Shown here: in pieces, positions 9,248 through 27,642 of the stretch
Position numbering within the stretch: the stretch's first letter is position 1
Layout of the letters: every line of letters begins with the position of its first letter
Virus record (IMG/VR): IMGVR_UViG_3300044701_000569
Location: 62,001-126,000 of that record
Reading direction: 5' to 3' (one strand)
DNA length: 64,000 nucleotides
Program-made: the position numbers and the translations under genes
Notes under the pieces: generated by a model
What the model saw: the letters and a program-made list of their open reading frames with translations, nothing else
What the model was told of the DNA's origin: nothing
Databases searched by the model: none

Positions 9248-9646
9248 ATGAAAAAAATCTTTGTCAACGGATCTTTTGATGTTTTGCATAGAGGACACAT
9301 AGAGTTACTCAAGTATGCACGGCGTCAGGGTGATTTTTTAGTAGTTGCCATAGACACTGATGAAAGGATACGCTATCTTAAAGGTACATTGCGTCCAATA
9401 AACAATCAATGGGATAGAAAATTTGTGCTAGAAAATTTACGTGCTGTTGACGACGTATGTTTATTTTCGTCAGATGCCGAATTAGTTGCACTAATAAAAG
9501 AATACGCTCCAGACGTAATGGTTAAAGGCAGTGACTATATAGGTAAAAATATTATTGGAGCAGAATACTGTAAAGAAATTAAGTTTTATGACAGAACAGA
9601 ACACTCAACAACAAAAACAATTCAGGATATTATTACTCGGGGATAA
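9248..9646 (+). CDS. rfaE2: Heptose-1-phosphate nucleotidyltransferase (HldE C-terminal domain / RfaE2-like)
   Basis: GSFDVLHRGH (HxGH), LKGTLRPINN and VKGSDY motifs; operon context. Confidence 0.85.
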   Translation: MKKIFVNGSFDVLHRGHIELLKYARRQGDFLVVAIDTDERIRYLKGTLRPINNQWDRKFVLENLRAVDDVCLFSSDAELVALIKEYAPDVMVKGSDYIGKNIIGAEYCKEIKFYDRTEHSTTKTIQDIITRG

Positions 9647-10361
9647 TTGTATTGATGTGTATCAGTATGGTACTGTTGATAGATTAAGCCCTGAGGCGCC
9701 GGTTCCTATCTTTAAATATAGTCACAAAGAACAACGACCCGGCATGGCCGGCAATGTTAATAACAATTTAAAAGCATTAGGTTGCAGTGTAAACTACCTG
9801 CATACGGAAACTAGTATGAAGACTAGGCTAATTGATAGCCGTAGTAAACAGCAGATGATTAGAATTGACGACGATGTTACAGCAACACCTATTACGTTTG
9901 AAACAGACATCCCTAACATTTACGATGCTGTTGTTATCAGCGACTATAATAAAGGAACAATAACATACGAGTTGATGGAAGAAATTATTCAATGGTCTAA
10001 CCACTCAACTAAAATTCCTGTTTTTATTGATACAAAGAAAACGGACCTAGCAAGACTGCAGGGTGCGTGGGTTAAAATTAACGAATTAGAATACAGTAAA
10101 ATTAAATCTTCTTGTTCAGGATTAATTGTAACTAGAGGAGAGAAAGGTGCTGTAATTCCGCACCATGAAATTAAATTAGATGCGCCGCGTGTTGAAGTTG
10201 TTGATGTAACAGGTGCTGGCGACACGTTTCTAGCTGCTCTTGCATACAAATGGCTAGAGACAGGAAGTATAAATGCAGCATTATTTTTTGCGGTAGAAGC
10301 GTCATCAATAACTGTACAGCATGTTGGATGCTATGCGCCAACAGTGGAGGAAATAGGATGA
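9588..10361 (+). CDS. rfaE1: Heptose-7-phosphate kinase (HldE N-terminal PfkB domain / RfaE1-like)
   Basis: RLSPEAPVP, PGMAGNV, ISDYNKG and DVTGAGDTF motifs. Start taken at the ATG at 9588. Confidence 0.9.
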   Translation: MTEQNTQQQKQFRILLLGDNCIDVYQYGTVDRLSPEAPVPIFKYSHKEQRPGMAGNVNNNLKALGCSVNYLHTETSMKTRLIDSRSKQQMIRIDDDVTATPITFETDIPNIYDAVVISDYNKGTITYELMEEIIQWSNHSTKIPVFIDTKKTDLARLQGAWVKINELEYSKIKSSCSGLIVTRGEKGAVIPHHEIKLDAPRVEVVDVTGAGDTFLAALAYKWLETGSINAALFFAVEASSITVQHVGCYAPTVEEIG

Positions 10362-11179
10362 AAATACTAGTAACAGGGCACAACGGATTTATTGGTAAAA
10401 ATCTTGCCATGTATCTTACATCAAAGGGTCACGAGGTATCTGGATGGGACTATGAACCTAACACTATACCTAATCCTGAAGGGTATGACTGGGTGGTACA
10501 TCTTGGTGCTATAACATCTACAACCTGCACAGATGTAGATCAAATAATGGAACAAAATTTTGAAAACTCTGTTAGATTAATTCAAGCCTGTGATATGATG
10601 GGAGTTAATTTTCAGTACGCTTCTAGTGCAAGTGTGTACGGATCTCATCAACATTTTAAAGAAAACGGACCTTTACTACCGCAAAGTCCGTATGCATGGA
10701 GCAAATATCTATTTGATAGATTTGTTAATCAACTTAAAGACGAATTTCAAATAACTGTTCAAGGTTTTAGATACTTTAATGTATACGGTATTGGAGAAGA
10801 ACACAAAGGTGATCAGGCTAGTCCTTACACTAAATTTAGAGAACAAGCAATTTCTAACAAAAAAATAAAATTGTTTGAAGGCAGTGAAAACTACAAGAGA
10901 GATTTTGTTTGGGTAGGTGACGTATGCCGTGTGCATGAATTAATGTTGGAAAAGTCTGAGCGTGGTATTTTCAATGTAGGCACAGGATCTCCAGTTAGTT
11001 TTGACACTATAGCAAGAACCATAGCACAGCGTTATTCAGCTGAACTAGAACACATACCTATGCCTGAAAATTTACGGTCTCAGTACCAAACCTATACCTG
11101 TGCAAATTTAGAAAAATTAAACAGTGTAATTGATATGCAATGGACTAGAATAGAGGATTATATAAATGGAACAGACTAA
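10358..11179 (+). CDS. hldD: ADP-L-glycero-D-manno-heptose 6-epimerase
   Basis: TGHNGFIG, YASSASVYG, YAWSK (YxxxK), RYFNVYG, RDFVWV and QYQTYTCA motifs. Start at the ATGA overlap with the kinase stop. Confidence 0.9.
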   Translation: MKILVTGHNGFIGKNLAMYLTSKGHEVSGWDYEPNTIPNPEGYDWVVHLGAITSTTCTDVDQIMEQNFENSVRLIQACDMMGVNFQYASSASVYGSHQHFKENGPLLPQSPYAWSKYLFDRFVNQLKDEFQITVQGFRYFNVYGIGEEHKGDQASPYTKFREQAISNKKIKLFEGSENYKRDFVWVGDVCRVHELMLEKSERGIFNVGTGSPVSFDTIARTIAQRYSAELEHIPMPENLRSQYQTYTCANLEKLNSVIDMQWTRIEDYINGTD

Positions 11180-11591
11180 TCTACAACCGCAACGACTGTC
11201 AGGAGTTGTTAAAAAAGGCTGGGGCTATGAACTTATATGGGCAACTAACGAAAAGTATGCAGGCAAAATTCTTGCATTTGATCATGCAGGATCTAAAATG
11301 AGTATGCATTTCCATAGGCAAAAAGACGAAACATGGTTTGTTAACAGCGGAAAATTTCTAGTACGTTGGATTGATACAAACACTGCTAAGGTGAATGAAA
11401 AAGAATTAAATGAAGGCGATATTTGGCACAATCCTCCACTTCAACCTCACCAACTGATTGCTCTTGTTGACGGTGCCAGTATAACTGAAGTAAGTACTCC
11501 TGATTCTGTAGAAGACAATTATAGAATTTCTCCAGGTGACAGTCAAAAGGAACAAACTAAAGATGTCAAACCGGTACCTCCACAGTATTGA
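11166..11591 (+). CDS. Cupin-fold putative sugar(-phosphate) isomerase
   Basis: KGWGYELIW, SMHFHRQKDETW, PPLQPHQL and EVSTPD cupin metal-binding motifs. Confidence 0.75.
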   Translation: MEQTNLQPQRLSGVVKKGWGYELIWATNEKYAGKILAFDHAGSKMSMHFHRQKDETWFVNSGKFLVRWIDTNTAKVNEKELNEGDIWHNPPLQPHQLIALVDGASITEVSTPDSVEDNYRISPGDSQKEQTKDVKPVPPQY

Positions 11592-12183
11592 TGTGTCTTC
11601 TGATCCTATAGCAACACGATGTGTGATAGGATTAGATCGAGACGGAGTTATAAATCGTGATCTAGGAACTTATGTAACTGATCCTGATCAATTTGAACCT
11701 ATACCAGGTAGTATAGAAGCTATTGCTAAAATACGACGCTTAGGTCATAAAATAGTTATCATTACCAATCAAGGTGGTATTGAAAAAGGTATTATGACCG
11801 AACAAGACGTTGATAGAGTTCATGCAAGAATGTTTGACATGCTGGGTGCTGCAGGATGCAGCAGTTTAGATGCTCTTTACTACAGTGCCAGTAGTAGGAA
11901 AGAAGATCCGTTTGCAAAACCAAACGTAGGCATGTTCAAACGTTGCGAAAATGAGCATCGTCAGATAAAGTTTTCTGAAGGATTTTATGTAGGGGATAAA
12001 ATAACTGATTTAAAAGCAGCCTTAAAGATTGGTGCTAGACCAGTACTGGTAAGAACTGGTTACGGAAAAGAAACTGAAGAACTATTAAATCGTTTCACTT
12101 ATAAAAGAATAAAGCAGCAAACTCAAATATTTGATGATCTTGCTGCTTTTTCTCTTTGGTTAGAATCAAACAATTACGCCTGA
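11563..12183 (+). CDS. gmhB: Heptose-1,7-bisphosphate phosphatase (HAD family)
   Basis: LDRDGVIN, ITNQGGI, KPNVGM and VGDKITD motifs. Start taken at the ATG at 11563. Confidence 0.9.
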   Translation: MSNRYLHSIDVSSDPIATRCVIGLDRDGVINRDLGTYVTDPDQFEPIPGSIEAIAKIRRLGHKIVIITNQGGIEKGIMTEQDVDRVHARMFDMLGAAGCSSLDALYYSASSRKEDPFAKPNVGMFKRCENEHRQIKFSEGFYVGDKITDLKAALKIGARPVLVRTGYGKETEELLNRFTYKRIKQQTQIFDDLAAFSLWLESNNYA

Positions 12184-15100
12184 GCTTCACCCCATTTAAT
12201 AATAATGTTTGCTGTTGTGTTTGCACCACTAACCTTATAGATATTAATAGCTAGTACGTCAGGACCATTAGGGAATGTACCCCTACCGCCTAATGGTGTA
12301 TTTGTAAGTTCTTTCAATTCTTTAAGTTCTAGTGTAGAACGTTCACCAGGTGTAGCAATAAACGAGAATACAGTTTCGCCTGGTTGTGCATACGGTGGTT
12401 CAATAAATTCAACCTGTACAGTGCCTGATCCAGCAGTTAATGTACCTGAATACGAGTTGTTAAATGACACTTGATAGAACTGTGTAGTTCCATGTCGTTG
12501 TGCTGACACTGCATTTATTTGGGTGTTAGCAGGAAACGATACTGAACCGCCCGATGTGGACACAGCAGTACCTGCTCTAGCACCTGCTGCGTCAAAACTT
12601 GCTTTAGTTATGTATGCAAAGTTTCTGTTGATCAAGTTACTGCCGTATGTAAATCTTACAACACTACCTGGACCAATATACCAATAGTTATTAGTGCTTA
12701 AAGATATACGATAGCTGCTGCCATCCTGTCTAACTCTTGTAACAGTAGTATTTGGATAGAAATATGCACCGTTAGCTCCGGCACTATTTGTAACTAGTGT
12801 AACAACAGAACCAACTGCAATTGGCCCAAGTGACTCATATACACTTTCAGATATTCTAAGCTCTGAACTGTAATATGCGCCGTCTAAAATTGTAAGATCA
12901 ACAGTTAAAATATTTACTGCTGTTAACGAAGCAGTAGTTAAACTAGAACCAGTACTCCAACTTACAGAGCCACCGGAAGCAATCTGAGCAAAACTAGGTT
13001 GTCCTCCTTGAGCAAGACCACTCAGTCCTGACCAACCAATTAAGTTAGGATCTGTAGGATAGTTGTTAGGATTTAATACGCCTTCAACAATAATACCGCC
13101 TTTGATTAACGCATCGCTACTATCAACTCCGTCTGATGTAATTTCAAGACCTTGCAATAGTAGCTGCGCACGATTTAACAATTCTCTTTCGCCTAAATCT
13201 CCAACAATAGCATTAGACACTGACGGTGCTAGACGTATTAAGAACGCTGTTTGTTTTGTAGTAGATACATCAATACCTGTTTCTGAGTATGAAAAGATAT
13301 AACCACGATCTTCATCAAACCCGCCATCTGTTAGGAAAGCACTACCCCAGTGACTAATTAACGGAGTAATTGTATTACTAATCAGTATTACACCTGTGTT
13401 TCTATCGTGTGCATCAGCACTGCCCGCAGTATAAGTTCTAGTTGCGCCTGCTTGGAAGTTACTAAATGTAGTACCTCTATCGCAGTTGATTAAAGAATTT
13501 CCGCTCTTACCACTATAGCTGACAATTTCATTGTTTATGTAAACAGTGCCACTTTCAGGAAAGAAACTAGCATCTCTTAGAGGAATAGTAGTTTGTGATG
13601 ATGTGATATTTTCTGAAAGTTGGCCTGGAGGACCTTCGTTAGTAACTTCATAACGAACCGGCAAGTTACCAGAACGCATAAATGCTTCGGTATTAATGTT
13701 GCTGTTACGCATTCTATGAGCAAAGACAAAATTACCATTTGATCCTCTCAGCATGAAGTCAATAAATCCAGCACCATACCAACTGTACTGGATACCAATC
13801 ATCTGCATCTTTGCTGGGTCAATATTATATCCGCTAGGCCCAGTACCGTCAAGTTTATCTAAGTTAAAATCTGACTGTTTGGTTTTTTTATCTGTTACTA
13901 ACATCATCTTAGCACCAGTAACGCTCCTAGTACCTCTAAAATCAGGAGTAACACTTATACTTGTATCACTAATAACGTGTGAAACAACATGTGTCATACC
14001 TCTAATAATGACTCTGTCGCCGGCTTTTAGCTGCTCAGTAAATCTAGTATTAGTGCCAACAACAGAGTTACTATCAGCGTCAATGGCTATTGTTCCCGCA
14101 CACTGGAATGTACCTGTTCTCTGCGCTACAGATATCTGTGTTCCGTCATACTCCCAATAAATTCCATTTTGATCGTCAAAAATTCCAGAACGCACAGTTG
14201 CACCGTGCCATGATACTACGCTCATTTGAGCACCAAAGCCCAGTTCAGCTGTAGTAGATCCTAGTCTTCGTTGAGCACGAACTTTGAATGTACGCTCATC
14301 ATCAATATCAACAACTTCATAATCAAACCACGGTGGCGTACTGTTTCCTTCACCGCTGTTATATCCAGGTGTTACTACTCCTAGTAATCTAATAACACCT
14401 CCTACCTGTACACCGTGATCGTTGTCATCAGTTACAATAGTAATCAATGAGTTAACTTCTACACCGTCTGCTGTCACACTTCTTAAATCGTAGCTGGGAG
14501 CAAATAGAGCACCTGTGGTATACATAATACCTTTACCAGACTGATAACGAATATACTTTTTACTTTGACGTATAGCCTGTGCACCGTGCTGCGGGCCGCC
14601 AGTGCCTAACTGTACGCCGCCATCAAATGGTCTATGTACAAAGAACGAATCTGGTCTAGGATAAATTGTCCCTGTAATATTTAAAGAGCTAGTGTCAATT
14701 GCACCAGGCGCTCTAGCTTGATAGCGTAAACTTGAGATTGTTGGGATTTCAGTAGCTATAAACGAGCCAGATGCTAAGCCATGGTTGTTTGTACCGTTAT
14801 CACTACCTGCTACAGCAAAAAATGTATCGCCAGGCACTAATCCGTGCGGTGATACAAAATCAACTCTTATAGTAGATAAAGCATCAAACAGTATACTATT
14901 ACCTCTACTAATTGTACCAGTAGTGTCATCAGACATAGTAAAGGTACAGATCAGTGGCATAATAGACCCTTCTACAGCAGGCCCTGCTGTGTAAGAAATT
15001 GCGTCTATAGTTGATCCTAATACTGATGTTACCCTTACTAAAATATCATTAGCTGGTGAAGCACCATCTAGATCACTGCCCTCTAATATAATTCTATCAC

Positions 15101-20140: not shown

Positions 20141-20148
20141 TATTTATT
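20141..20148 (-). promoter_or_regulatory. Late promoter box (AATAAATA)
   Basis: tatttatt upstream of the GGAGG SD of the gene starting at 20122. Confidence 0.55.
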
Positions 20149-20153
20149 CTTTA

Positions 20154-20546: not shown

Positions 20547-20615
20547 AGCCTTGATCCATTTATAGTAGTATTTAGTAATTTTGAGGCATAAGTAAAACTA
20601 TACCAGGAATTGCAC

Positions 20616-21314
20616 ATGTTTTCAAAAAAGATAAATTTAACAGCCTACACACTAGATAAAAATATATACGACTTTTGTAAACCTGTTTATAAAAGCAAAG
20701 CTAAACCTTCATGGTTAGAGCAGCTAAAGAGTGTAATAGTAAGTTGGGACGAACGTACACAGATGCCTGCTAAGAGCGGAACTTTGTTAACTTGTCCAGG
20801 CGTTAGAGATTTTTTATCAACACCAATACAAGTACCTATGTGGGGAGATATAGATATTCTTATCAAACCTGATGGTTCTTGGACATACAATACTAGACCA
20901 GAATGGGGACTAACAGTAACTCATCACAACGAAGCTCAGTTTAAAGGAGCATATAATAATCGTCTAGCACTAAAATTATCTAACCCTTGGATTTTTAAAA
21001 CAGATTCTAAAGTAAATTTTATGGTAACAGAATCACATTATAGTACCAGTTACTTTAGAGATCTAGGTGTGTTATTTTCTCCAGGAGTAACAAATTATTA
21101 TAAGCAACATTCGTTAAATGTTCATTTAAATTGTCCCATAAAAGATGAAGCATATATTATTAATTTAAAACACGGAATGCCATTGATATCAATTTTTCCT
21201 ATGACTGAAAGAGAAATAGAGTTTGATTCACAATTAATAAGTGTTGAAGAATGGAATAATATTTCAAACCATTTTCCTTACACATTTGTAGGTAGGTATT
21301 TTAAAAAGGACTAG
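20616..21314 (+). CDS. Hypothetical protein, possibly dUTPase-like beta fold (DUF6065-like)
   Basis: TCPGVRDF, KLSNPW and PLISIFP segments. AGGA SD 7 nt before the ATG at 20616. Confidence 0.5.
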   Translation: MFSKKINLTAYTLDKNIYDFCKPVYKSKAKPSWLEQLKSVIVSWDERTQMPAKSGTLLTCPGVRDFLSTPIQVPMWGDIDILIKPDGSWTYNTRPEWGLTVTHHNEAQFKGAYNNRLALKLSNPWIFKTDSKVNFMVTESHYSTSYFRDLGVLFSPGVTNYYKQHSLNVHLNCPIKDEAYIINLKHGMPLISIFPMTEREIEFDSQLISVEEWNNISNHFPYTFVGRYFKKD

Positions 21315-21315
21315 T

Positions 21316-22041
21316 ATGGCAAAGACTGTTTATTGGGCTCCGTGGGGGCCGCCACAAAAATATAGTGAGTCTTTTTTAGGATACACAGATCCTGTAAATG
21401 TTTTTACAGATACAATGAGATTTACTAATAAGGAAAACAAATTAGATAATTTCTTTAGCTGTCCAGCATTTGTTAATTCTGTAAAAAATACATTTTTATT
21501 TAAAAGTCCTGCAAATTGTGATGTAGAGTTTAAAGAAGAATATATTATTAATAAAGCTAGTCCTAATATAATATACGATCGCGATGTTCTAGTCTTTAAA
21601 AATCCATCAATGTTAGATTCATATACAATTAGATTTGCAGCTAATTGGATTTTTTTTAGTGACGATGACTTAGATATAGAATCAAGACATCCGTATCTTC
21701 ATCAAACTCAGGTATCTAAATACGGTTATTACGTTCCGGGTACTATGAATATAGGCGCTTGGTTTAGGCCGCTGGAATATGCATTTCAATGTTGGCCGGG
21801 TGTTACTGAGTTTAAAGTAGATCAAGAAGATCCTTTAATGTATCTTAAAGTTAATACTAATGATCCAGTTGTTTTTAAAAAGTTTTATTTAACACCTGAA
21901 TTATTTGATCTTTCTATGAGCTGTGTAAGATTAAAAAATTATTGGCGAGAAAGAAATTTAAAAAGGTTGTACAATATTTTTAATGCATCTAAAATACGCA
22001 ATAAAATTCTTAATGAAATTAAAAAGAATCTAATGGATTAA
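21316..22041 (+). CDS. Hypothetical protein, distant paralogue-like of the preceding gene
   Basis: SCPAF, PGTMNIGAWFRP and DPLMYL segments; translationally coupled to the upstream gene. Confidence 0.5.
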   Translation: MAKTVYWAPWGPPQKYSESFLGYTDPVNVFTDTMRFTNKENKLDNFFSCPAFVNSVKNTFLFKSPANCDVEFKEEYIINKASPNIIYDRDVLVFKNPSMLDSYTIRFAANWIFFSDDDLDIESRHPYLHQTQVSKYGYYVPGTMNIGAWFRPLEYAFQCWPGVTEFKVDQEDPLMYLKVNTNDPVVFKKFYLTPELFDLSMSCVRLKNYWRERNLKRLYNIFNASKIRNKILNEIKKNLMD

Positions 22042-22043
22042 CA

Positions 22044-22625
22044 ATGCAATTTGACGAAATATTTCCTACCTATCTAGTTAAAGACATTAATTTAAAATTA
22101 GCAGAAAAACTATTACCTCTCTGCAATAGATACACAGATGAAACAAAAACTAATTGCCTTCATATAGAAAATTTTCCAAGTACGCTGTATGATAGAGATT
22201 TAGAACGTAAGGTTATGGATGAACCTGAGGTTAAAGAAGCGTTTGATATTATCATTGAGTCTTACTTGAAGCCGTTTTTAAATCATCGAGGTATAAATTT
22301 GCCACAGCCTTTAAAACCTTTTGGGTTTTTTAGTTCAATGAAAAAGCATGCTTATCTTAGAAAGCACTGTCATTTAGATTCTTTATTTGCTGGAATAATC
22401 TATTTAGAAGTAGGTAAAGAAGTGCCACCGTTAATTCTGTATGATCCTAAACCAATGAGATCGTTCATAAACTGGCCGTTGTTACCCAACAATACTAAAG
22501 ATACCCCTCTATTGGTTATACCCCCTCAACAAGGTTTAGTATTATTGTGGGACTCGTATTTAGAACACGAGGTTCCTCAAAAATTAAATGACGAACCTCG
22601 TAAAACTTTTGTCTTTAATCTTTAA
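22044..22625 (+). CDS. Putative 2OG-Fe(II) oxygenase
   Basis: HCHLDSLFAGIIYL, LILYDP, LEHEVP and RKTFVFN give the double-stranded beta-helix His/His/Arg pattern. Confidence 0.75.
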   Translation: MQFDEIFPTYLVKDINLKLAEKLLPLCNRYTDETKTNCLHIENFPSTLYDRDLERKVMDEPEVKEAFDIIIESYLKPFLNHRGINLPQPLKPFGFFSSMKKHAYLRKHCHLDSLFAGIIYLEVGKEVPPLILYDPKPMRSFINWPLLPNNTKDTPLLVIPPQQGLVLLWDSYLEHEVPQKLNDEPRKTFVFNL

Positions 22626-24421
22626 TTTTTAATCTGCACTAACTTTCCGTATTCTGGCAAATATAGATATTCTATATCACTTCTTGCCAGTGTGTCTAAT
22701 GCGTCGTCTAGTGTTTCAACTAACGGATCTCCGCCAAGATTAAAACTTGTATTAAACAATATAGGAACTCCAGTTTTTTTGTAAAACTCGTTTATTAGAC
22801 CGTAATAGTGAAGATTTTGTTCTTCTGTTACAGTCTGTATACGGCAAGTTCCGTCAATGTGAATAATGCTTGGAATTTTTTCTTCTATTCCTGGTTGACA
22901 ATTAACAGCATACATCATATATGGGGTATCTTCCATACCTCGTAAATCAAACCATTCGTGTACGTGCTCTTTTAAAATACTTCCAGCGAACGGTCTAAAA
23001 TATTCTCGTCTCTTAACATTATTTACAAATTCTTTACCATCTTTAAATCTAGGATCAAATAGAATACTTCTGTTTCCTAATGCTCTAGGTCCGTTTTCTG
23101 ATTTTCCTTGAAAAATAGCAACAATATTTTTTTCTTCTAGCAAACTAACTATTTTTAAATAGTCGGCTTCTACAATTTTACCGTTAACTTTTTCTACAGC
23201 TTGTTCTAACTCGTTATTGCTGTAAGTGTATTCAAATCCAAGATAAAGGCCATCTTTAGTGTAATCAACACAAGAGTCTGGTTGTAGATCATAATATACC
23301 AACATTGCTGCACCTATAGCAGTGCCTGCATCGTTGCTGATTGGTTCTACATACATCTTAATACCCAAGTCGTTTAATTTATTTAGATAATAGTAATTTG
23401 CAACGCAATTTAATCCGTAGCCGCCGCTTACTACTACATTCTTTTCACCTGTTAGTTCACAGGCCTTAATAATTAAATCTAAAACAAGGTCTTGTGTCTG
23501 TGTTTGAACAGCATAGGCAAGATCTCTTCTGTTTTCTAATAGCGTTACATCGTAATCATCTGTATTGCCGTGATCATTTAAAAATTTAAATATTCCGTAA
23601 TTAACTACACTACCGTTTGGATATGTAGGCACTATTAAGTTTCTATTAGAAAGAGGCAGGTCACTAGTAGAATCAAACAGTTCTGGAATCTTGTCGTTTG
23701 GTTTACCGTACGGAAATAAACCCATAGTCTTTCCTGCTTCGATGCCGGGCCAACCGCAGTATTGTGTTACTGCTTCGTATACTTTTACTATTCCAGCTCT
23801 ATCGCTTACAATAGCTTGGTGTGTCTGACCTTTTTCACCGTACATCGTACCGTCTGCATCATTTACAACAAAACAATTTTGTATGCCTCGCATTCCAACA
23901 TTTTTATAGAGTGTTTTAAAATTATTTGGATACCCGCAAGAAAAAATTGATTCTGTTTCCCATCCTATAGACTGCTCTCCATAGATATCTTTCATAGGAA
24001 TAAATGTGCCTGCTCCATCTACTATAACTGCTGCTGCACTTTTAAAACCTGATCTATAAAATGCACAGGCTGCATGTAGCTTATGGTGCATTGTGCTAAG
24101 ATCAATTACTTGAGGGTGATTAATCATATCACCCTTTCTGTCAATAAGATTTAATTTTCTAGCGAGACCAGTATAAACATCTTCGCCCATAAAATCAACT
24201 TTGCCTGCTGTATCTTTTAAAGATTGAGTGTGTGCTACTACAAGATAATCAAGTTTGTCAGTATATTCTTTTATTTTCATCATAGCAGCGTAGGGGCCGC
24301 CATCGTACTTGGCTCTTGTTAAACGTTCTTCTTCAATGCTAAAAACAATTTTTCCATTTTTTAGAAGACAAACGCTAGCATTATGTCCTCTTGCTATTCC
24401 TGCTATCCAAATATCTTTCAT
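22622..24421 (-). CDS. O-carbamoyltransferase (NodU/CmcH family)
   Basis: HNASVCL, EEERLTRAK, HHKLHAACAF, GKTMGLFPYG, NDAGTAIG, GPRALGNRS, REYFRPFA, HIDGTCRIQTV and NTSFN motifs. Confidence 0.95.
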   Translation of the reverse strand: MKDIWIAGIARGHNASVCLLKNGKIVFSIEEERLTRAKYDGGPYAAMMKIKEYTDKLDYLVVAHTQSLKDTAGKVDFMGEDVYTGLARKLNLIDRKGDMINHPQVIDLSTMHHKLHAACAFYRSGFKSAAAVIVDGAGTFIPMKDIYGEQSIGWETESIFSCGYPNNFKTLYKNVGMRGIQNCFVVNDADGTMYGEKGQTHQAIVSDRAGIVKVYEAVTQYCGWPGIEAGKTMGLFPYGKPNDKIPELFDSTSDLPLSNRNLIVPTYPNGSVVNYGIFKFLNDHGNTDDYDVTLLENRRDLAYAVQTQTQDLVLDLIIKACELTGEKNVVVSGGYGLNCVANYYYLNKLNDLGIKMYVEPISNDAGTAIGAAMLVYYDLQPDSCVDYTKDGLYLGFEYTYSNNELEQAVEKVNGKIVEADYLKIVSLLEEKNIVAIFQGKSENGPRALGNRSILFDPRFKDGKEFVNNVKRREYFRPFAGSILKEHVHEWFDLRGMEDTPYMMYAVNCQPGIEEKIPSIIHIDGTCRIQTVTEEQNLHYYGLINEFYKKTGVPILFNTSFNLGGDPLVETLDDALDTLARSDIEYLYLPEYGKLVQIKN

Positions 24422-24424
24422 ATA

Positions 24425-25345
24425 TTAAACCTTTTTCTTTATGTGTTCTCTAATTTTTTCAATTAACTCGTTGGTTTCTTTTTCTGTAAAATCCATACAA
24501 GAATCATTATATCTATTAGCTATATCAGCATCTATACCATTTTCAGAAATTCTAATAGGAAAGTATCGTATATCAACTGGGGTTTTTTGTAATATTTGAA
24601 AATGATCAGAATATGTTATATTTTCAGCAAACGTGCTGCCAAGTATCACAGTTCCGGGCTTATCAAATGCGTAAGCCATATGTTGTCCTACGCTGTCACA
24701 GCCTATAAAATAATCAGATGCTTCAACAATAGCTGCCCATTGTCTTAGACTAGTTTGTATTTTAAACGACTTATTTTCAACATCAAGATGCTCGCCAAAA
24801 TAAATTACATTGTAATCTTTCATTAAATTATCTAAAATTTGATTGTAGGCTTTCTTTGTGAGAGATCTACTCATTGGATCAATTACTTCGCTGTGCATTA
24901 CAGTTGATGATCTACCAAACGGTTGAATAACTATAGTCTTTTCTCTGTTTTGAGCTTTCTTAGCGTTAATGAGAGCATCAACAGCATTCATTTCTTCTTG
25001 TTTAGATAATACTATTTTTGGTTTTTCTAAATCTGAATGATCTTCGGTGTCATTGATCAAATAGTCAAATGACTCGATTAAATTTCTTTTTTGATTATAA
25101 TATCCGTGATCTCTATAAGGTTCAGGAGTAACTATAACATTTGGTTTAATTATAGTTTCAAAAAGATTTTTTGTTTCAGGACCATAAGCAAGGTCCTGCA
25201 ATTCTTTAATACCTACAAAGAATTCAAGACCGCTCTCTGCTAGAATGTAAAAATTTGGGCCGTGTTTCTTATAATACTTTAGCAGTGCTGGAATAGCACA
25301 TATTACTCTGCCAGCGCCTCCGCCAATAGCAAAAATTTTTTTCAT
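24425..25345 (-). CDS. GT9-like (ADP-heptose-type) glycosyltransferase
   Basis: N-terminal GGGAGRVICAIPAL; C-terminal LRQWAAIVEASDYFIGCDSVGQHMAYAFDKPGTVILGST matches the GT9 pattern IGNDSGPMHLAAALGxPTVALFG. Confidence 0.75.
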   Translation of the reverse strand: MKKIFAIGGGAGRVICAIPALLKYYKKHGPNFYILAESGLEFFVGIKELQDLAYGPETKNLFETIIKPNVIVTPEPYRDHGYYNQKRNLIESFDYLINDTEDHSDLEKPKIVLSKQEEMNAVDALINAKKAQNREKTIVIQPFGRSSTVMHSEVIDPMSRSLTKKAYNQILDNLMKDYNVIYFGEHLDVENKSFKIQTSLRQWAAIVEASDYFIGCDSVGQHMAYAFDKPGTVILGSTFAENITYSDHFQILQKTPVDIRYFPIRISENGIDADIANRYNDSCMDFTEKETNELIEKIREHIKKKV

Positions 25346-25399
25346 AAAAAATCCCTAGTTGTTGAATACAATATTAGTTATTCAAATCAACTAGGGATT
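25346..25399 (-). terminator. Long hairpin plus U6 that overlaps the SD of the GT9-like gene
   Basis: aatccctagttg (25350-25361) / caactagggatt (25388-25399) plus ttgaata / tattcaa; the minus strand continues UUUU into the AUG. Confidence 0.65.
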
Positions 25400-25415
25400 A
25401 TGTGTAAATTAGAGT

Positions 25416-26162
25416 TTATTCAGGATCTGGGCCGCCATCGTCTGTGGCAGTTTCATCTGCTGTCCAATTTAGTTCTGTTTTTAAATAATCAATAAACTGT
25501 TGTTGATCTGCCTCAACTTTTTTCCAGTGTGCTAAGAACGTACTTAACTCAGTGTCTGGTATAGGAAGAGATTCAACTGTGTGTTCAAATTCTGTTCCTT
25601 CAGCAAAAACTATAGGATTAGAAAAAACACAAAGATTTGGATTATTATCTGTAGCACCTTCAATACCCGCTATCATTTTCTTTGTATCAACTAATTTTGT
25701 TTTATACTCGTTAAGCGTATCCATAGTTACTGGTGGTAGAGGTTGGCTAAGAATAGACACAAAGACTGGTAGTGGGAATTTTTTTACTACTTCTACTCGT
25801 TCTTCTAAGGGAGGAACAGGAACAGGAGGCAGAACAGTTGTACCAAGCACTACTGGCTCTCCACTAGCTTCTGCTTCCTCTATGAGACGCAATAATCTTT
25901 CTCTTTCTGCTGTTTCTTCTGCTTCTCTAGCAAGTATTACAACATTCTCTTCTTCTCGTTTAGCAAAAATATAATCTTCAATTTCCTTGTATCCATCGCC
26001 GCCTAATTTAATTACTTTATTATTAAAATAAAAATCACCCGGCTGTACGTCAACATCAGTTTCAACCCAGGGTTGACCTGTTATTTCAACAAAGTGACGA
26101 TCATCAGTAACAGCCATTACAATTTCTAAATTATATTGTTTAGTTTCAGTTCTAAAAAACAT
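25416..26162 (-). CDS. Hypothetical protein downstream of the Cys-rich fibre gene
   Basis: 248-aa acidic/Pro-rich ORF; the position would fit a fibre chaperone, but this is unproven. Confidence 0.6.
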   Translation of the reverse strand: MFFRTETKQYNLEIVMAVTDDRHFVEITGQPWVETDVDVQPGDFYFNNKVIKLGGDGYKEIEDYIFAKREEENVVILAREAEETAERERLLRLIEEAEASGEPVVLGTTVLPPVPVPPLEERVEVVKKFPLPVFVSILSQPLPPVTMDTLNEYKTKLVDTKKMIAGIEGATDNNPNLCVFSNPIVFAEGTEFEHTVESLPIPDTELSTFLAHWKKVEADQQQFIDYLKTELNWTADETATDDGGPDPE

Positions 26163-26172
26163 ATTTTTTTCC

Positions 26173-27642
26173 TTAATATACTATAACAACTGCACCGCCA
26201 CCACCAGCAGTATTAAGTCTATTGCCGCCACCGCCGTATCCTGGTGCAGCAACACTTGCACCGTTACCAAATTTAAAGTCAGTTAGATTTCCGCCAGTTT
26301 CACTCTTAAGAGTTGATAACGGAATAACTGCACTGTCTTCTGCGTTTGATAGGACGGTGTCATCTCTTACATAACCTAAGTTGTAGCAAGTGGTTGCACC
26401 TGCTGCGCCTGCTAGGTGTGTTATACATGAACATGGCCAGTTTGAAATACCGCTACCAAACACAAATGTAAAGTGATCTTGGCTAAATCCAATGTAGCAA
26501 ACATAAGTTGAAGTTGCGCCGCTGCCGCCGCCACCGGCGCTGCCTGCCATTGTTGAAACAACCTGTTCACTGTGTGCATTACTGCCGTCGGCGCTACTGT
26601 TTCCTGCCTGAGCTCCAAGACCTACTGGACATGACTTAAATAGGTAGCTGTCACTTGTTCCCCAATCACCGGAGCTTGCACGTTGAGTTGCGCCGGCCCA
26701 AACGTGTCTGTTAGTGCCGCCGCCGCTGCCGCCTATGCATAGGCATGCACAGCAGAAACGTTGGCACATACAGCTAGCCCAAGGCATATTGGTGTAGCAC
26801 TGTCCACCAAATACGTTGTGATAGGATATTAAACAGTTACAGCCCATGTTAGTGTATGAACTAAAAAATCCGCAGCCGCATGAAGATGATGGGCAAGCAG
26901 TTGGACAAGCACAAATTACTGTACAAATACAGTTGTAGCGTGTTCCGCCAAAGCTGTAGTCATAACCTGTTGAGTAAGATGAGCTATTTGTACAAGTGTA
27001 AGGGGTGCCGCCTCCAGTCGCTGCTCCAGCGCCGTCGTAACAGCTATCCTGTTCCCAATACGGAATAAAAACTCCTCTACCGCCAGTTCTGTTTACATCA
27101 CCACCTGTAGCTGTACCACCTGTATTAAAATATCCGCTGATGCAGTTTGCATAACCGCAAACTGGCAGCGTAAATCCTACAGATGTAGGATTGTCATTAG
27201 AACTTGTTCTAGCAGTACTATTGCTTAAACAGGTCCAAGATATTGCTGTTTCTGTAGCATTGTTAGCTGTTACCGTAGTAGCACCAGATGAAACTACACT
27301 TGCAGTTAAGCCTCCAATTGATCCTACACTAACTGAAACACTTGATCCAGGTGATAAGTCAGTAACTGTTTTTTCTGCGTAGCCGCCACCTGCGCCAGGA
27401 AGTATGCCTTTAAATCTCATACAGTAGTTTTGCGAAGGTGTTGTAACACCCGAACAGCAGTTACTACTGCAAAAGAAAAATGAGGTTTCTCTATAGCAAG
27501 ATCCTGCACCTATTACAAAAACTTTTGCTTGATTAACGCCTGCAGGAACAGTCCATGTGGTTGTACCAGGAGTCGTAAATACTTTAGCGTATTTGTATCC
27601 TGTAGCTGTATTACTTTCAGTAATGTTTACAAATCTTCCCAT
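26173..27642 (-). CDS. Gly-rich, Cys-rich fibre-tip / receptor-binding candidate
   Basis: FTTPGTTTWTVPAGV...VIGAG, GAGGGYAEK and GGGGAVVIVY glycine-rich-domain frame with about 31 Cys inserted. Confidence 0.7.
   Translation of the reverse strand: MGRFVNITESNTATGYKYAKVFTTPGTTTWTVPAGVNQAKVFVIGAGSCYRETSFFFCSSNCCSGVTTPSQNYCMRFKGILPGAGGGYAEKTVTDLSPGSSVSVSVGSIGGLTASVVSSGATTVTANNATETAISWTCLSNSTARTSSNDNPTSVGFTLPVCGYANCISGYFNTGGTATGGDVNRTGGRGVFIPYWEQDSCYDGAGAATGGGTPYTCTNSSSYSTGYDYSFGGTRYNCICTVICACPTACPSSSCGCGFFSSYTNMGCNCLISYHNVFGGQCYTNMPWASCMCQRFCCACLCIGGSGGGTNRHVWAGATQRASSGDWGTSDSYLFKSCPVGLGAQAGNSSADGSNAHSEQVVSTMAGSAGGGGSGATSTYVCYIGFSQDHFTFVFGSGISNWPCSCITHLAGAAGATTCYNLGYVRDDTVLSNAEDSAVIPLSTLKSETGGNLTDFKFGNGASVAAPGYGGGGNRLNTAGGGGAVVIVY

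What the first reader, a model, noticed from the sequence alone, without database searches (positions are those of the whole stretch)
9248..27642. Possible virion heptosylation and carbamoylation system
Seen: a nucleotide-heptose operon (9248-12183) and a GT9-like transferase plus carbamoyltransferase (22622-25345) flank or sit within very large Ser/Thr/Gly-rich fibre genes, many with SGG/TGG motifs. Known: GT9 enzymes use ADP-heptose; bacterial AAH/TibC enzymes heptosylate serines of autotransporter adhesins; NodU/CmcH enzymes O-carbamoylate sugars. Inference: the phage makes its own activated heptose, transfers it to virion fibres and may carbamoylate the glycan. The alternatives are remodelling host LPS (superinfection exclusion) or DNA hypermodification, since some phage carbamoyltransferases act on hydroxymethylcytosine.
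Basis: inference. Interest (0 to 1): 0.68.

Follow-up and report, generated by a model that had tools for sequence, protein, structure and literature searches.

The report
Phage heptose and carbamoyl transfer cassette
A large freshwater T4-like phage carries genes to make an activated seven-carbon sugar plus a phage-only transferase/carbamoyltransferase pair set among its tail-fibre genes; this most likely decorates the virus particle, but the target is unproven.

Summary
The genes are real and correctly placed. On the + strand, 9248-12183 encodes HldE-like adenylyltransferase and kinase, an HldD-like epimerase, a metal cupin and a GmhB-like phosphatase. On the - strand, 22622-25345 encodes a NodU/TobZ-type O-carbamoyltransferase and a 306-aa protein. 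That protein misses Pfam GT9 but folds as a GT9 enzyme (Z 19-23 to 3TOV, WaaF, TibC, WaaC; next folds Z 12 or less). In P-SSM2 and S-CAM3 the same genes form one cassette between tail-fibre genes, so the window holds a split version. The conserved core is the GT9-like gene followed directly by the carbamoyltransferase (74 of 80 viral loci). The family is phage-specific. Three corrections: no GmhA exists in the 357-kb genome, and the cupin is the candidate replacement; the Asp that is catalytic in WaaC is Arg or Lys in this family; SGG/TGG motifs are barely enriched. DNA modification is unlikely because the only ThyA homolog is a true thymidylate synthase and no TET or C5-methylase is present. 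Context in structural gene arrays behind late-promoter motifs, repeated in unrelated Aeromonas and Vibrio phages, favours a virion target. The acceptor remains inferred.

The parts
6179..6185 (+). ATAAATA, a T4-type late-promoter-like motif. It heads the + strand array 6191-12183.
   Evidence: 13 of 16 copies of this motif lie in the 6.8% of the window that is intergenic, 6-115 nt before gene starts.
6191..8778 (+). Virion structural protein (387 aa) and gp15 tail sheath stabiliser (474 aa). These are the first genes of the array that continues into the heptose genes.
   Evidence: phrog_11591 at 5e-89. PF16724 T4-gp15_tss at 8e-26. Gaps to the next genes are -1, 8 and 20 nt.
8787..9227 (+). 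NUDIX hydrolase. It is a conserved neighbour of gp15 and probably not part of the system.
   Evidence: PF00293 at 2e-13. NUDIX sits next to gp15 in 21 of 80 related loci whether or not heptose genes are nearby.
9248..9646 (+). Heptose-1-phosphate adenylyltransferase-like protein (HldE domain II type, 132 aa).
   Evidence: TIGR02199 at 5.7e-34, 117 bits against a 181.5-bit cut-off; phrog_7878 at 2e-44.
9588..10361 (+). PfkB-type heptose-7-phosphate kinase-like protein (HldE domain I type, 257 aa from the ATG at 9588).
   Evidence: TIGR02198 at 6.6e-49, 167 bits against a 345-bit cut-off. Start codon chosen from the translation.
10358..11179 (+). ADP-glyceromanno-heptose 6-epimerase-like SDR (273 aa from the ATG at 10358).
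   Evidence: TIGR02197 at 3.4e-69, 233 bits against a 274.6-bit cut-off. Start codon.
11166..11591 (+). Metal-binding cupin (141 aa). It is the candidate sedoheptulose-7-phosphate isomerase standing in for the missing GmhA.
   Evidence: - Cupin_2 hit.
- Invariant H48, H50, E55, H95.
- Fold matches include D-lyxose/mannose isomerase, phosphomannose isomerase and the CapF cupin domain.
- Neighbouring Atlas clusters carry Lyx_isomer or MannoseP_isomer hits.
- It is present in every cultured phage that has the kinase.
11563..12183 (+). GmhB-like HAD-IIIA heptose-1,7-bisphosphate phosphatase (206 aa from the ATG at 11563).
   Evidence: NF006506 at 5e-40, 137 bits against a 178-bit cut-off. The DRDGV motif is visible in the translation.
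12174..19154 (-). Virion structural protein of 2326 aa lying between the two clusters. It is a candidate acceptor.
   Evidence: phrog_5838 at 7e-256. 32% S+T+G. Homologs sit beside the cassette in S-CAM3.
22044..22625 (+). 2OG-Fe(II) oxygenase, convergent on the carbamoyltransferase gene. The association is loose.
   Evidence: PF13759 at 9e-15. Found near the cassette in 9 of 80 loci and in P-SSM2.
22622..24421 (-). NodU/CmcH/TobZ-type O-carbamoyltransferase (599 aa).
   Evidence: PF16861 at 6.5e-58 and PF02543 at 2.6e-26. PDB relatives by sequence are TobZ, NovN and GdmN. It follows the GT9-like gene in 74 of 80 loci.
24425..25345 (-). Phage-specific GT9-fold transferase (306 aa, phrog_8954). 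It has the motif GGxGR where WaaC and WaaF have GD.
   Evidence: - AlphaFold2 model, pLDDT 97.
- VIA-align Z 23.1 (3TOV), 21.2 (WaaF), 20.8 (TibC), 19.3 (WaaC); next fold Z 11.8 or less.
- D217/S218/H222 align with WaaC D261/T262/H266.
- R13 sits at the position of WaaC D13.
25346..25400 (-). Stable hairpin followed by U6. The U run ends one base before the GT9-like start codon.
   Evidence: dG -21.8 kcal/mol, z -5.7, 0 of 200 shuffles fold as well. Sequence.
25416..27974 (-). Three genes between the fibre gene and the transferase: an unknown 248-aa protein, a Cys- and Gly/Ser/Thr-rich 489-aa protein, and a 106-aa fibre-associated protein.
   Evidence: The 248-aa and 489-aa proteins have no family hits. 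The 489-aa protein is 6.3% Cys and 39% S+T+G. The 106-aa protein matches phrog_11338 (tail fibre) and is conserved next to the fibre gene in P-SSM2 and S-CAM3.
27988..33462 (-). Tail fibre protein (1824 aa), the first gene of the - strand array that ends with the carbamoyltransferase. It is a candidate acceptor.
   Evidence: phrog_9851 at 7e-198. Gaps down the array are 13, 11, 10, 70 and 3 nt.
33491..33497 (-). ATAAATA late-promoter-like motif, 29 nt upstream of the 1824-aa fibre gene.

Best explanation
This is one phage glycosylation cassette that has been split into two parts in this genome.

Part A (9248-12183) makes an activated heptose, most likely ADP-L-glycero-beta-D-manno-heptose. The proposed steps are:
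1. The cupin converts sedoheptulose-7-phosphate to D-glycero-D-manno-heptose-7-phosphate. This step is inferred; it replaces the absent GmhA.
2. The PfkB kinase makes the 1,7-bisphosphate.
3. The HAD phosphatase removes the 7-phosphate.
4. The adenylyltransferase makes ADP-heptose.
5. The SDR epimerises C6.

Part B (22622-25345) is a phage-specific GT9-fold transferase that is translationally coupled to an O-carbamoyltransferase. The transferase puts the heptose on an acceptor. The carbamoyltransferase then carbamoylates a sugar hydroxyl using carbamoyl phosphate and ATP. The resulting carbamoyl-heptose would resemble the one in the Pseudomonas LPS inner core.

Both parts lie in arrays of virion genes behind late-promoter motifs. 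The most likely acceptor is therefore a phage-made virion protein, such as a tail fibre or one of the neighbouring structural proteins.

Shown here: the gene identities by best match, the GT9 fold, the conserved donor-site motif, the gene pairing and the synteny. Inferred: the donor sugar, the order of reactions, the cupin's role and the acceptor.
For: - Best family matches of the five + strand genes are the ADP-heptose enzymes.
- The GT9-like protein's fold is specifically GT9: Z 19-23, against 11.8 or less for all other folds (Foldseek).
- Its C-terminal D-S-x-x-x-H motif aligns with the ADP-heptose site of WaaC and WaaF.
- No GT2 or GT1-type (PF00534) glycosyltransferase was detected in the genome, and it holds a single GT9-like gene. 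That gene is the only glycosyltransferase detected that could use the heptose.
- P-SSM2 and S-CAM3 carry all these genes as one block between tail-fibre genes.
- The carbamoyltransferase follows the GT9-like gene in 74 of 80 viral loci and starts within tens of bases of its stop.
- All seven cultured cyanophage species with the pair also carry the heptose kinase.
- Aeromonas phage HJ05 and Vibrio phage D505 have the transferase alone. It lies between a fibre-like gene and the tail sheath gene in HJ05, and between a 2109-aa hypothetical and a 1756-aa annotated tail protein in D505.
- Late-promoter-like motifs head both arrays, and gaps between genes are tiny.
- The family is found only in viral contigs and in scattered MAG contigs.
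- Cyanobacterial LPS is reported to lack heptose and Kdo (PMC4515613 abstract). The usual GT9 acceptor is therefore missing in the hosts of the cyanophage relatives.
- Precedents: TibC is a GT9-fold enzyme (one search lists its structures) that heptosylates a protein (background knowledge). Mycobacteriophage capsid and tail proteins are glycosylated (Freeman 2023, as cited in PMC12619734). A carbamoyl group sits on heptose II of the Pseudomonas core, attributed to WapO (PMC8005017).
- The closest solved relatives of the carbamoyltransferase by sequence are TobZ, NovN and GdmN. From background knowledge these are O-carbamoyltransferases, and TobZ and NovN act on sugar hydroxyls.
Against: - No experiment or dataset shows a modified virion protein.
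- All heptose-enzyme matches are below NCBIfam equivalog cut-offs, so the sugar could be a different heptose or a different nucleotide.
- The Asp that is catalytic in WaaC (D13) is Arg or Lys in 70 of 72 family members. The chemistry or the acceptor may therefore differ from known GT9 enzymes. A glycine-rich loop with Arg hints at an anionic acceptor, for example one bearing phosphate.
- [ST]GG motifs are barely enriched, and there are no AIDA-like repeats.
- Only 15-17 of 80 loci have the nucleotide-heptose genes within 10 kb.
- A complete 372-kb relative has the transferase with neither kinase nor carbamoyltransferase.
- The regions beside fibre genes are also common insertion sites for accessory genes in T4-like phages, so position alone is weak evidence.
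- A terminator-like hairpin sits directly before the transferase gene.
Confidence: 0.4

Rival explanations
1. Host envelope remodelling. The transferase adds (carbamoyl-)heptose to a host surface glycan or a lipid-linked precursor during infection. The effect could be to block superinfection, to stop new virions sticking to debris, or to alter grazer recognition. This is the traditional 'LPS gene' reading.
For: - All characterised GT9 enzymes except the TibC/AAH group act on LPS cores.
- JGI names some homologs 'ADP-heptose:LPS heptosyltransferase'.
- The literature files these genes under LPS genes (PMC3037559; PMC7378029).
- Carbamoyl-heptose is a known LPS core feature in Pseudomonas (PMC8005017).
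- The GGxGR loop could bind a phosphate-bearing lipid-linked acceptor (inference).
- The host of this freshwater phage is unknown.
Against: - The family is phage-specific, with no copy found in a cultured bacterial genome among 185,579 species genomes.
- WaaC's catalytic Asp13 is not conserved.
- Cyanobacterial LPS lacks heptose and Kdo (PMC4515613), yet cyanophages carry the full cassette.
- The genes sit in late structural arrays, not among early or moron genes.
- In three unrelated phage types the gene lies beside fibre or tail genes.
Confidence: 0.2
2. Another acceptor or a soluble product. The pair might make a carbamoylated nucleotide-heptose or a small glycoside. Alternatively it might modify a non-virion phage or host protein or an anionic metabolite, for example in counter-defence.
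For: - Arg/Lys at the usual catalytic-base position suggests an acidic or phosphate-bearing acceptor.
- TobZ, NovN and GdmN, the closest solved carbamoyltransferases by sequence, act on small molecules (background knowledge).
- The transferase can occur alone.
- The heptose module occurs without it in S-SM2, P-TIM68 and S-T4.
Against: - The family's fixed position in structural modules across phage lineages is not explained.
- No transporter or further tailoring genes were recognised nearby.
Confidence: 0.15
3. The transferase-like protein is not a working glycosyltransferase (for example a sugar-nucleotide-binding assembly factor), or the two clusters are functionally unrelated accessory DNA.
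For: - The Asp that is catalytic in WaaC is missing.
- The Pfam GT9 score is below the cut-off.
- Sullivan et al. raised 'stuffer DNA' as a possibility (PMC3037559).
- The complex prediction gave no answer, which is no evidence either way.
Against: - 28 columns are invariant or nearly so across 72 sequences that are 25-49% identical to the window protein. These include the whole donor-site motif D217, S218, H222 and R160, R201.
- At least 590 viral contigs carry the gene.
- It is tightly coupled to an intact carbamoyltransferase with about 100 invariant residues.
- The cassette keeps the same order in marine and freshwater phages.
Confidence: 0.1
4. DNA hypermodification. Heptose and/or carbamoyl groups are attached to a hydroxylated pyrimidine in phage DNA to evade restriction.
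For: - Phage gene clusters can put heptose on 5hmC (bioRxiv 10.1101/2023.12.21.572611).
- A phage carbamoyltransferase makes 5-carbamoyloxymethylcytosine (PMC8670742).
- Such clusters can lie near structural genes.
Against: - The only thymidylate-synthase homolog in the 357-kb genome passes the ThyA equivalog cut-offs. It has the PPCH and PFNIASY motifs of a dUMP enzyme.
- No TET/JBP and no C5 DNA methylase was found, although the TET search had no positive control.
- The DNA heptosyltransferase resembles T4 beta-glucosyltransferase, not GT9.
- In the eLife study, DNA-acting carbamoyltransferases sit beside ThyA-like genes, while those on unmodified contigs sit beside glycosyltransferases.
Confidence: 0.05

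Closest known systems
LPS inner-core heptosyltransferases WaaC and WaaF (CAZy GT9)
   Same: Same GT-B fold: Z 21.2 to WaaF and 19.3 to WaaC over about 250-264 residues. The same C-terminal donor-site motif: D217/S218/H222 align with WaaC D261/T262/H266. The gene is linked to ADP-heptose synthesis genes.
   Different: - Only 12-14% identity, and below the Pfam cut-off.
- WaaC's G12-D13 is G12-R13 here, with P19-A20-L21 in register.
- The family is phage-only.
- It sits among virion genes.
- Carriers include cyanophages whose hosts are reported to lack heptose and Kdo in LPS.
Autotransporter heptosyltransferases TibC/AAH (BAHT family)
   Same: GT9-type fold: Z 20.8, rmsd 2.9-3.0 over 263 residues, model 1-306 aligned to TibC 97-391. 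These enzymes show that a GT9-fold enzyme can heptosylate proteins using ADP-heptose.
   Different: - No N-terminal extension.
- No conserved cysteines that could form TibC's iron finger.
- Arg where the catalytic Asp is expected.
- No AIDA-like repeats in the candidate acceptors.
Pseudomonas inner-core carbamoyl-heptose (heptosyltransferases plus WapO/PA5005)
   Same: A heptosyltransferase working with a carbamoyltransferase to give O-carbamoyl-heptose (PMC8005017). This is the same predicted product chemistry.
   Different: That system is bacterial and acts on LPS, and its genes are part of a large core cluster. Here the pair is a translationally coupled two-gene unit in phage structural modules. 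Orthology to WapO was not tested.
The 'LPS gene' cluster of cyanophages P-SSM2, S-SSM7 and S-SM2 (T4-GC 302-308)
   Same: Homologous genes (34-64% identity) and the same set of functions. P-SSM2 genes 307-314 match the window's two clusters.
   Different: In the window the cassette is split by about 10 kb of virion genes and partly inverted. The genome is a 357-kb freshwater phage without psbA or transaldolase. It has a full-size GmhB-like phosphatase where P-SSM2 has a 114-aa HAD protein that is annotated as 'phosphoheptose isomerase'.
Mycobacteriophage virion glycosylation
   Same: Phage-encoded glycosyltransferases modify capsid and tail proteins (Freeman 2023, as cited in PMC12619734).
   Different: Different glycosyltransferase families, different sugars and Gram-positive-type hosts. 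No heptose or carbamoyl group is reported there.

Membership tests
CAZy GT9 / Pfam PF01075 heptosyltransferases | GT-B fold closest to solved GT9 structures | tested here: met
   Z 23.1 (3TOV), 21.2 (WaaF), 20.8 (TibC), 19.3 (WaaC); the next fold scores 11.8 or less. The top 30 Foldseek hits are all GT9.
CAZy GT9 / Pfam PF01075 heptosyltransferases | Sequence score above the family cut-off | tested here: not met
   PF01075 scores 14 bits against a 22-bit cut-off. TIGR02201 scores 24.6 bits against 170. phmmer against PDB sequences finds no GT9 chain; only a family profile does, E = 0.0017.
CAZy GT9 / Pfam PF01075 heptosyltransferases | C-terminal ADP-heptose-site motif D-[ST]-G-x-x-H | tested here: met
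   D217, S218 and H222 are invariant or nearly so in 72 sequences. They align to WaaC D261/T262/H266 and to the WaaF equivalents.
CAZy GT9 / Pfam PF01075 heptosyltransferases | Catalytic Asp at the start of helix 1 (WaaC D13) | tested here: not met
   Ungapped N-terminal comparison: WaaC has G12-D13...P19-A20-L21 and the window protein has G12-R13...P19-A20-L21. Across the family the position is R in 66 and K in 4 of 72 sequences; P-SSM2, S-CAM3, HJ05 and D505 all have R there. The catalytic role of D13 comes from background knowledge.
CAZy GT9 / Pfam PF01075 heptosyltransferases | Transfers heptose from ADP-heptose | not testable with these tools
   Only genomic linkage to heptose-nucleotide genes is available.
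BAHT protein heptosyltransferases (TibC/AAH) | Iron-finger cysteines and a dodecamer-forming extension | tested here: not met
   No cysteine is among the conserved columns. The model aligns to TibC residues 97-391 only, so the N-terminal part has no counterpart. Oligomeric state was not tested.
BAHT protein heptosyltransferases (TibC/AAH) | Repeat-rich autotransporter-type acceptor encoded nearby | tested here: not met
   No tandem repeats of protein-repeat size were found in 12000-45000.
ADP-L-glycero-beta-D-manno-heptose pathway (GmhA, HldE, GmhB, HldD) | GmhA sedoheptulose-7-phosphate isomerase (SIS fold) | tested here: not met
   No SIS_2 match in the whole 357-kb genome; the control search matched in 9 genomes. 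The 'phosphoheptose isomerase' genes of P-SSM2 and S-CAM3 are HAD phosphatases.
ADP-L-glycero-beta-D-manno-heptose pathway (GmhA, HldE, GmhB, HldD) | Kinase, phosphatase, adenylyltransferase and epimerase reach equivalog scores | tested here: inconclusive
   Each gene's best hit is the expected enzyme, but each is below the cut-off: 167 bits against 345, 137 against 178, 117 against 181.5, and 233 against 274.6.
NodU/CmcH/TobZ O-carbamoyltransferases | Both Pfam domains (Kae1-like N-terminal, YrdC-like C-terminal) above cut-off | tested here: met
   PF02543 scores 93 bits against a cut-off of 24, and PF16861 scores 195 against 27. PDB relatives by sequence are TobZ, NovN and GdmN. About 100 residues are invariant in 36 sequences.
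Phage 5hmC carbamoyltransferases (DNA-modifying subgroup) | Co-occurrence with a ThyA-like dCMP hydroxymethylase | tested here: not met
   There is a single ThyA homolog about 115 kb away. It passes the thymidylate synthase cut-offs and has the dUMP-type PFNIASY motif.
Phage 5hmC carbamoyltransferases (DNA-modifying subgroup) | Discriminating residues at TobZ positions 408, 421 and 423 | not tested
   No residue-level alignment to TobZ numbering was made. The paper's text does not give the residues for each group.
Cupin aldose-ketose isomerases (type II PMI, D-lyxose isomerase) | Cupin fold with a His/His/Glu/His metal site | tested here: met
   H48, H50, E55 and H95 are invariant. Model pLDDT is 85. 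Fold hits include 7NZP, 3KMH and 7ZVY, but oxalate decarboxylase and quercetinase score equally well.
Cupin aldose-ketose isomerases (type II PMI, D-lyxose isomerase) | Family-level sequence match (PF01050 or PF07385) | tested here: not met
   Only Cupin_2 and Cupin_1 match at E of 0.01 or better. PF07385 and PF01050 appear only in a minority of members of neighbouring Atlas clusters.

The most novel reading that the evidence does not exclude
A phage-only branch of the GT9 fold swapped the catalytic Asp for Arg and became fused in function to an O-carbamoyltransferase. Together they coat tail fibres or other virion proteins with carbamoyl-heptose. The sugar comes from a self-contained phage pathway whose first step is run by a small metal cupin instead of GmhA. 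This would be the first heptosylated and carbamoylated virus particle. It would also be a new sedoheptulose-7-phosphate isomerase family, and both would be widespread in marine and freshwater T4-like phages.
Probability: 0.25. Interest if true: 0.8.

Novelty: new variant of a known kind. Interest (0 to 1): 0.55.

Why it matters
These genes have been listed in cyanophage genomes as 'LPS genes' since the first such genomes were compared, and their function has never been tested (PMC3037559). At least 590 viral contigs carry the transferase.

If the cassette decorates virions, it would add a new kind of protein glycosylation to phage biology. It would bear on host range, particle stability and grazing or adsorption losses in lakes and oceans. 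It would also change how these 'auxiliary metabolic genes' are counted.

Two enzymology questions become directly testable. One is how a GT9-fold enzyme works with Arg in place of its catalytic Asp. The other is whether a 120-140-aa cupin can replace GmhA.

If the target is instead the host envelope, the system would still be an unusual case of a lytic phage importing a sugar that its host does not use.

Tried and rejected
- Nucleotide search (megablast) of both clusters against 50,697 phage records found nothing. Protein-level searches were needed.
- phmmer of the transferase against PDB sequences gave only noise.
- hhalign of the family profile against WaaC aligned only the C-terminal motif. 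The N-terminal comparison therefore rests on an ungapped reading of the two sequences.
- The first related-loci run failed because the 72-sequence alignment had no stretch conserved enough to search with. A 12-sequence alignment worked.
I could therefore not test directly whether picocyanobacteria lack gmhA or hldE, and relied on a review abstract (PMC4515613).
- Complex prediction of carbamoyltransferase plus transferase returned 'no answer' (score 0.02). This is not evidence for or against binding.
- The sigma-70 promoter scan showed no enrichment: 70 found against 70 expected. The full TATAAATA octamer is rare, with 3 copies. The 7-mer ATAAATA was the informative pattern.
- The cupin fold search cannot separate isomerase from oxygenase or decarboxylase cupins. 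An RmlC-type epimerase role was set aside, because by background knowledge such epimerases lack the His/His/Glu/His metal site conserved here.
- The S-SCSM1 'mannose-6-phosphate isomerase' (PMC9602691) is not a tblastn hit of this cupin. That literature does not describe this family.
- Pfam at E up to 5 gave nothing useful for the unknown genes at 19160-22041 and 25416-27642.
- The transaldolase search, meant to test a sedoheptulose-7-phosphate supply link, was negative.
- The metatranscriptome contigs show presence in an RNA library only. DNA carry-over is not excluded and strand is unknown, so I do not count them as proof of expression.

Full report
**What is there**

The window is part of a 357,559-bp IMG/VR virus record judged complete by CheckV. 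It has about 39% G+C and T4-type virion genes: a gp13-like adaptor, gp15, and many fibre and baseplate genes. Near-identical DNA is found in freshwater and lake metagenomes from at least 14 studies. The genome has no psbA/psbD and no transaldolase. It is therefore a freshwater relative of the T4-like cyanophages with an unknown host, not a typical cyanophage.

**The + strand cluster**

On the + strand, 8787-12183 holds the genes below. Gaps between them are tiny or negative.

| Coordinates | Product | Best NCBIfam match: bits (cut-off) |
|---|---|---|
| 8787-9227 | NUDIX hydrolase | no heptose-enzyme match |
| 9248-9646 | cytidylyltransferase-fold protein | heptose-1-P adenylyltransferase domain of HldE: 117 (181.5) |
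| 9588-10361 | PfkB kinase | heptose-7-P kinase domain of HldE: 167 (345) |
| 10358-11179 | SDR | ADP-glyceromanno-heptose 6-epimerase: 233 (274.6) |
| 11166-11591 | 141-aa cupin | only weak cupin-subfamily hits |
| 11563-12183 | HAD-IIIA phosphatase | GmhB: 137 (178) |

All heptose-enzyme scores are below the curated equivalog cut-offs. The assignment is 'best match', not proven orthology. The first pathway enzyme, GmhA, is absent from the whole genome.

**The - strand cluster**

On the - strand, 22622-24421 encodes a 599-aa carbamoyltransferase with both Pfam domains well above cut-off. TobZ, NovN and GdmN are its solved relatives by sequence.

Three bases upstream, 24425-25345 encodes a 306-aa protein with no Pfam hit at E of 0.01 or better. 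It gives only a weak match to the C-terminal part of LPS heptosyltransferase III/RfaQ. Its family has about 363 clusters at 50% identity. A 72-sequence alignment gave an AlphaFold model with mean pLDDT 97.

- Foldseek's top 30 PDB hits are all GT9 enzymes.
- VIA-align separates GT9 members cleanly from every other GT-B fold. 3TOV scores Z 23.1, WaaF 21.2, TibC 20.8 and WaaC 19.3; all other folds score 11.8 or less.
- A family profile finds WaaF and WaaC in the PDB through one motif. hhalign places D217, S218 and H222 on WaaC D261, T262 and H266, the ADP-heptose site.

**A difference from known GT9 enzymes**

The two N-termini can be read without gaps.

- WaaC reads ...S-M-G12-D13-V-L-H-T-L-P19-A20-L21.
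- The window protein reads ...G-A-G12-R13-V-I-C-A-I-P19-A20-L21.

D13 is the proposed catalytic base of WaaC (my background knowledge). In the phage family this position is Arg in 66 and Lys in 4 of 72 sequences. The P-SSM2, S-CAM3, Aeromonas HJ05 and Vibrio D505 homologs all have Arg there too. No cysteines are conserved, so the iron finger of TibC is absent.

The family keeps the donor site but not the usual base. Other invariant acidic residues (E75 in an E-P-Y motif, E117, D156) could take over, or the acceptor could be anionic. This lowers 'it is a GT9 heptosyltransferase' more than it lowers 'it works like one'.

**The two clusters are one system**

In Prochlorococcus phage P-SSM2 (genes 307-314) and Synechococcus phage S-CAM3, homologs lie in one block. 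It holds, in order, the transferase, carbamoyltransferase, adenylyltransferase, kinase, a small HAD phosphatase, the cupin and the epimerase. The block sits between tail-fibre genes and is followed by the large virion protein and the gp13-gp15 genes. The window holds the same parts, with the heptose genes moved next to gp15 and several virion genes in between.

Among cultured phages, the transferase occurs in P-SSM2, P-SSM5, S-SSM7, S-SSM6a, S-CAM1, S-CAM3 and Sf-FS3. All of them also have the adjacent close carbamoyltransferase and the heptose kinase. The kinase and cupin also occur without the transferase in S-SM2, P-TIM68, S-T4 and Sf-CH5/8. The cupin's distribution matches the kinase's.

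A scan of IMG/VR found at least 590 contigs with the transferase. Counts in the 80 best loci:

| Feature within 10 kb of the transferase | Loci (of 80) |
|---|---|
| Carbamoyltransferase next gene downstream, same strand, starting within tens of bases | 74 |
| GmhB-like phosphatase | 47 |
| Adenylyltransferase, kinase, cupin or epimerase (range over the four) | 15-17 |

In a 280-kb relative the kinase lies tens of kilobases from the transferase. A complete 372-kb relative with terminal repeats has the transferase but neither kinase nor carbamoyltransferase. The core is therefore the transferase. The carbamoyltransferase is its near-constant partner, and the sugar-nucleotide genes are an accessory module.

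In this genome no GT2 or GT1-type (PF00534) glycosyltransferase was detected, and there is only one GT9-like gene. That gene is the only glycosyltransferase detected that could use the heptose.

**Where the family lives**

Only 12 of 185,579 species genomes have a hit. All are MAG contigs labelled with scattered taxa, from Verrucomicrobiales to Woesearchaeota, and one contig is 335 kb long. They look like mis-binned phage DNA.

Distant homologs (about 30% identity) occur in two phage types outside the T4-like cyanophages.

- In the 79-kb Aeromonas phage HJ05 the gene sits between a tail-fibre-like gene and the tail sheath gene.
- In the 78-kb Vibrio phages such as D505 it sits between a 2109-aa hypothetical and a 1756-aa annotated tail protein, just after the terminase gene.
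- No heptose or carbamoyl genes lie nearby in either.

By background knowledge, those hosts make ADP-heptose for their own LPS. Cyanobacterial LPS is reported to lack heptose and Kdo (PMC4515613 abstract). This fits a picture in which the phage brings the sugar pathway only where the host cannot supply it. It is an inference.

**Timing**

The heptamer ATAAATA, the core of the T4-type late promoter, occurs 16 times in the window. Thirteen of these lie in the 6.8% of the window that is intergenic, 6-115 nt upstream of gene starts.

- The copy at 6179-6185 heads the + array: virion protein, gp15, NUDIX and the heptose genes.
- The copy at 33491-33497 heads the - array: the 1824-aa fibre, three small genes, the transferase and the carbamoyltransferase.

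A very stable hairpin followed by six U ends one base before the transferase start codon (dG -21.8 kcal/mol, z -5.7). There is no room for a promoter after it. The pair is therefore probably expressed by attenuated read-through of the fibre transcript.

A freshwater metatranscriptome from the same study as a source-like DNA run holds exact short contigs from the transferase, carbamoyltransferase and neighbouring genes. This is only a weak sign of expression.

**The missing GmhA and the cupin**

The genes annotated 'phosphoheptose isomerase' in P-SSM2 and S-CAM3 are small HAD phosphatases. No GmhA was seen in this genome or in the P-SSM2 and S-CAM3 cassettes examined.

- The cupin has the full His/His/Glu/His metal site.
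- Its model (pLDDT 85) matches many cupins. These include D-lyxose/D-mannose isomerases, a phosphomannose isomerase and the CapF cupin domain, but oxalate decarboxylase scores as well.
- Neighbouring viral cupin clusters in the ESM Atlas carry Lyx_isomer or MannoseP_isomer hits in a minority of members.

Sedoheptulose-7-P to D-glycero-D-manno-heptose-7-P is the seven-carbon analogue of fructose-6-P to mannose-6-P. I therefore propose the cupin as the replacement isomerase, with probability about 0.5. The alternative is a CapF/WbuC-like modification of the nucleotide sugar together with the SDR.

**Rivals**

DNA modification deserves attention. Phage clusters can put heptose on 5hmC (bioRxiv 10.1101/2023.12.21.572611), and a phage carbamoyltransferase makes 5-carbamoyloxymethylcytosine (PMC8670742).

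- Those systems start from a ThyA-like hydroxymethylase or hydroxylase, or from a methylase plus TET (also PMC13326640).
- Here the single ThyA homolog passes thymidylate synthase cut-offs and has the PPCH and PFNIASY motifs of a dUMP enzyme.
- No TET/JBP or C5 methylase was found. The TET search lacked a positive control.

Host envelope remodelling is the traditional reading (PMC3037559). It cannot be excluded for a phage with an unknown host. However, it fits poorly with the phage-only family, the lost WaaC-type base, the heptose-free LPS of cyanophage hosts and the late structural context.

A soluble or other anionic acceptor remains possible because of the Arg.

The large ORFs are 30-39% Ser+Thr+Gly; by background knowledge this is ordinary for fibres. 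[ST]GG occurs 35 times against 26 expected from shuffles (P = 0.03). Only the Cys-rich 489-aa ORF is nominally enriched on its own. The fibres have no tandem repeats. The motifs add nothing to the case.

**Verdict**

- The functional link between the two clusters is well supported.
- The donor sugar is probably ADP-heptose.
- The product is probably a carbamoyl-heptoside.
- A virion protein is the most likely acceptor, at about 0.4, and this is unproven.

The gene set itself is known from cyanophage genomes. New here are the fold assignment of the 'hypothetical' transferase and its Asp-to-Arg change. Also new are the near-obligate pairing with the carbamoyltransferase, the restriction of the family to phages, the lack of GmhA with a cupin candidate, and the late-array context.

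Noticed in passing
whole window; G000 = 357,559 bp: The source is a freshwater phage. The stretch 22000-28000 is held at about 100% in lake and freshwater metagenomes, and parts of it in at least 14 studies. The genome lacks psbA/psbD and transaldolase although its closest cultured relatives are marine cyanophages, so its host is unknown.
   Followed up: partly
window 25346-25400 (- strand): A very stable hairpin (dG -21.8 kcal/mol, z -5.7) followed by UUUUUU ends one base before the AUG of the GT9-like gene. It looks like an intrinsic terminator or attenuator between the fibre genes and the enzyme pair. Its conservation in relatives was not checked.
   Followed up: partly
window 26173-27642 (- strand): A 489-aa ORF with 31 cysteines (6.3%, against 0.3-0.7% in the large fibres) and 39% Ser+Thr+Gly. 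It has no family hit and sits two genes upstream of the transferase. Homologs were found only in the closest relatives (8 of 80 loci).
   Followed up: partly
window, 16 sites (e.g. 6166-6172, 6179-6185, 20141-20147, 33491-33497, 41667-41673, 44698-44704, 57378-57384, 59383-59389): ATAAATA is rarer than chance overall (16 copies against 24 expected). Thirteen of the 16 copies sit in the 6.8% intergenic DNA just upstream of genes, marking T4-type late promoters in this freshwater phage.
   Followed up: yes
L002:17312-17656 (P-SSM2 PSSM2_311); L001:15597-15917 (S-CAM3 gp150): Genes annotated 'phosphoheptose isomerase' in public cyanophage records match HAD-type phosphatases (EcbF/BcbF capsule phosphatase family), not GmhA. 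The annotation has spread to other records and papers.
   Followed up: yes
L087-L098 (genome-contig hits): Contigs carrying the phage transferase are binned into MAGs labelled Verrucomicrobiales, Polynucleobacter, Woesearchaeota, Methanobacteriota, Chitinophagales and Neomarinimicrobiota, including contigs of 335 kb and 153 kb. These are probably phage genomes mis-binned into cellular MAGs.
   Followed up: no
window 20610-22625 (+ strand): A three-gene + strand unit: two unknowns of 234 and 241 aa (phrog_7084, phrog_17480), then a PF13759 2OG-Fe(II) oxygenase. Its end overlaps the carbamoyltransferase stop region. The trio travels with the cassette in the closest relatives (L006-L009, L013).
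   Followed up: partly
L067 / G003 (372,173 bp, direct terminal repeats): A complete jumbo relative has the GT9-like gene placed directly beside NUDIX and gp15. It has no carbamoyltransferase and no heptose kinase anywhere in the genome.
   Followed up: partly
window 9588-9646: The kinase reading frame (from the only available ATG at 9588) overlaps the end of the adenylyltransferase gene by 59 nt, an unusually long overlap. The order adenylyltransferase then kinase is the reverse of the fused bacterial HldE.
   Followed up: no
fold search of model m898fbf1055ec: Chains in the plant NDH-PSI supercomplex structures (9GRX chain 1, 7WFF chain a, 7F9O chain 6) match the phage transferase as well as the bacterial GT9 enzymes do (Z 18.5-19).
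   Followed up: no
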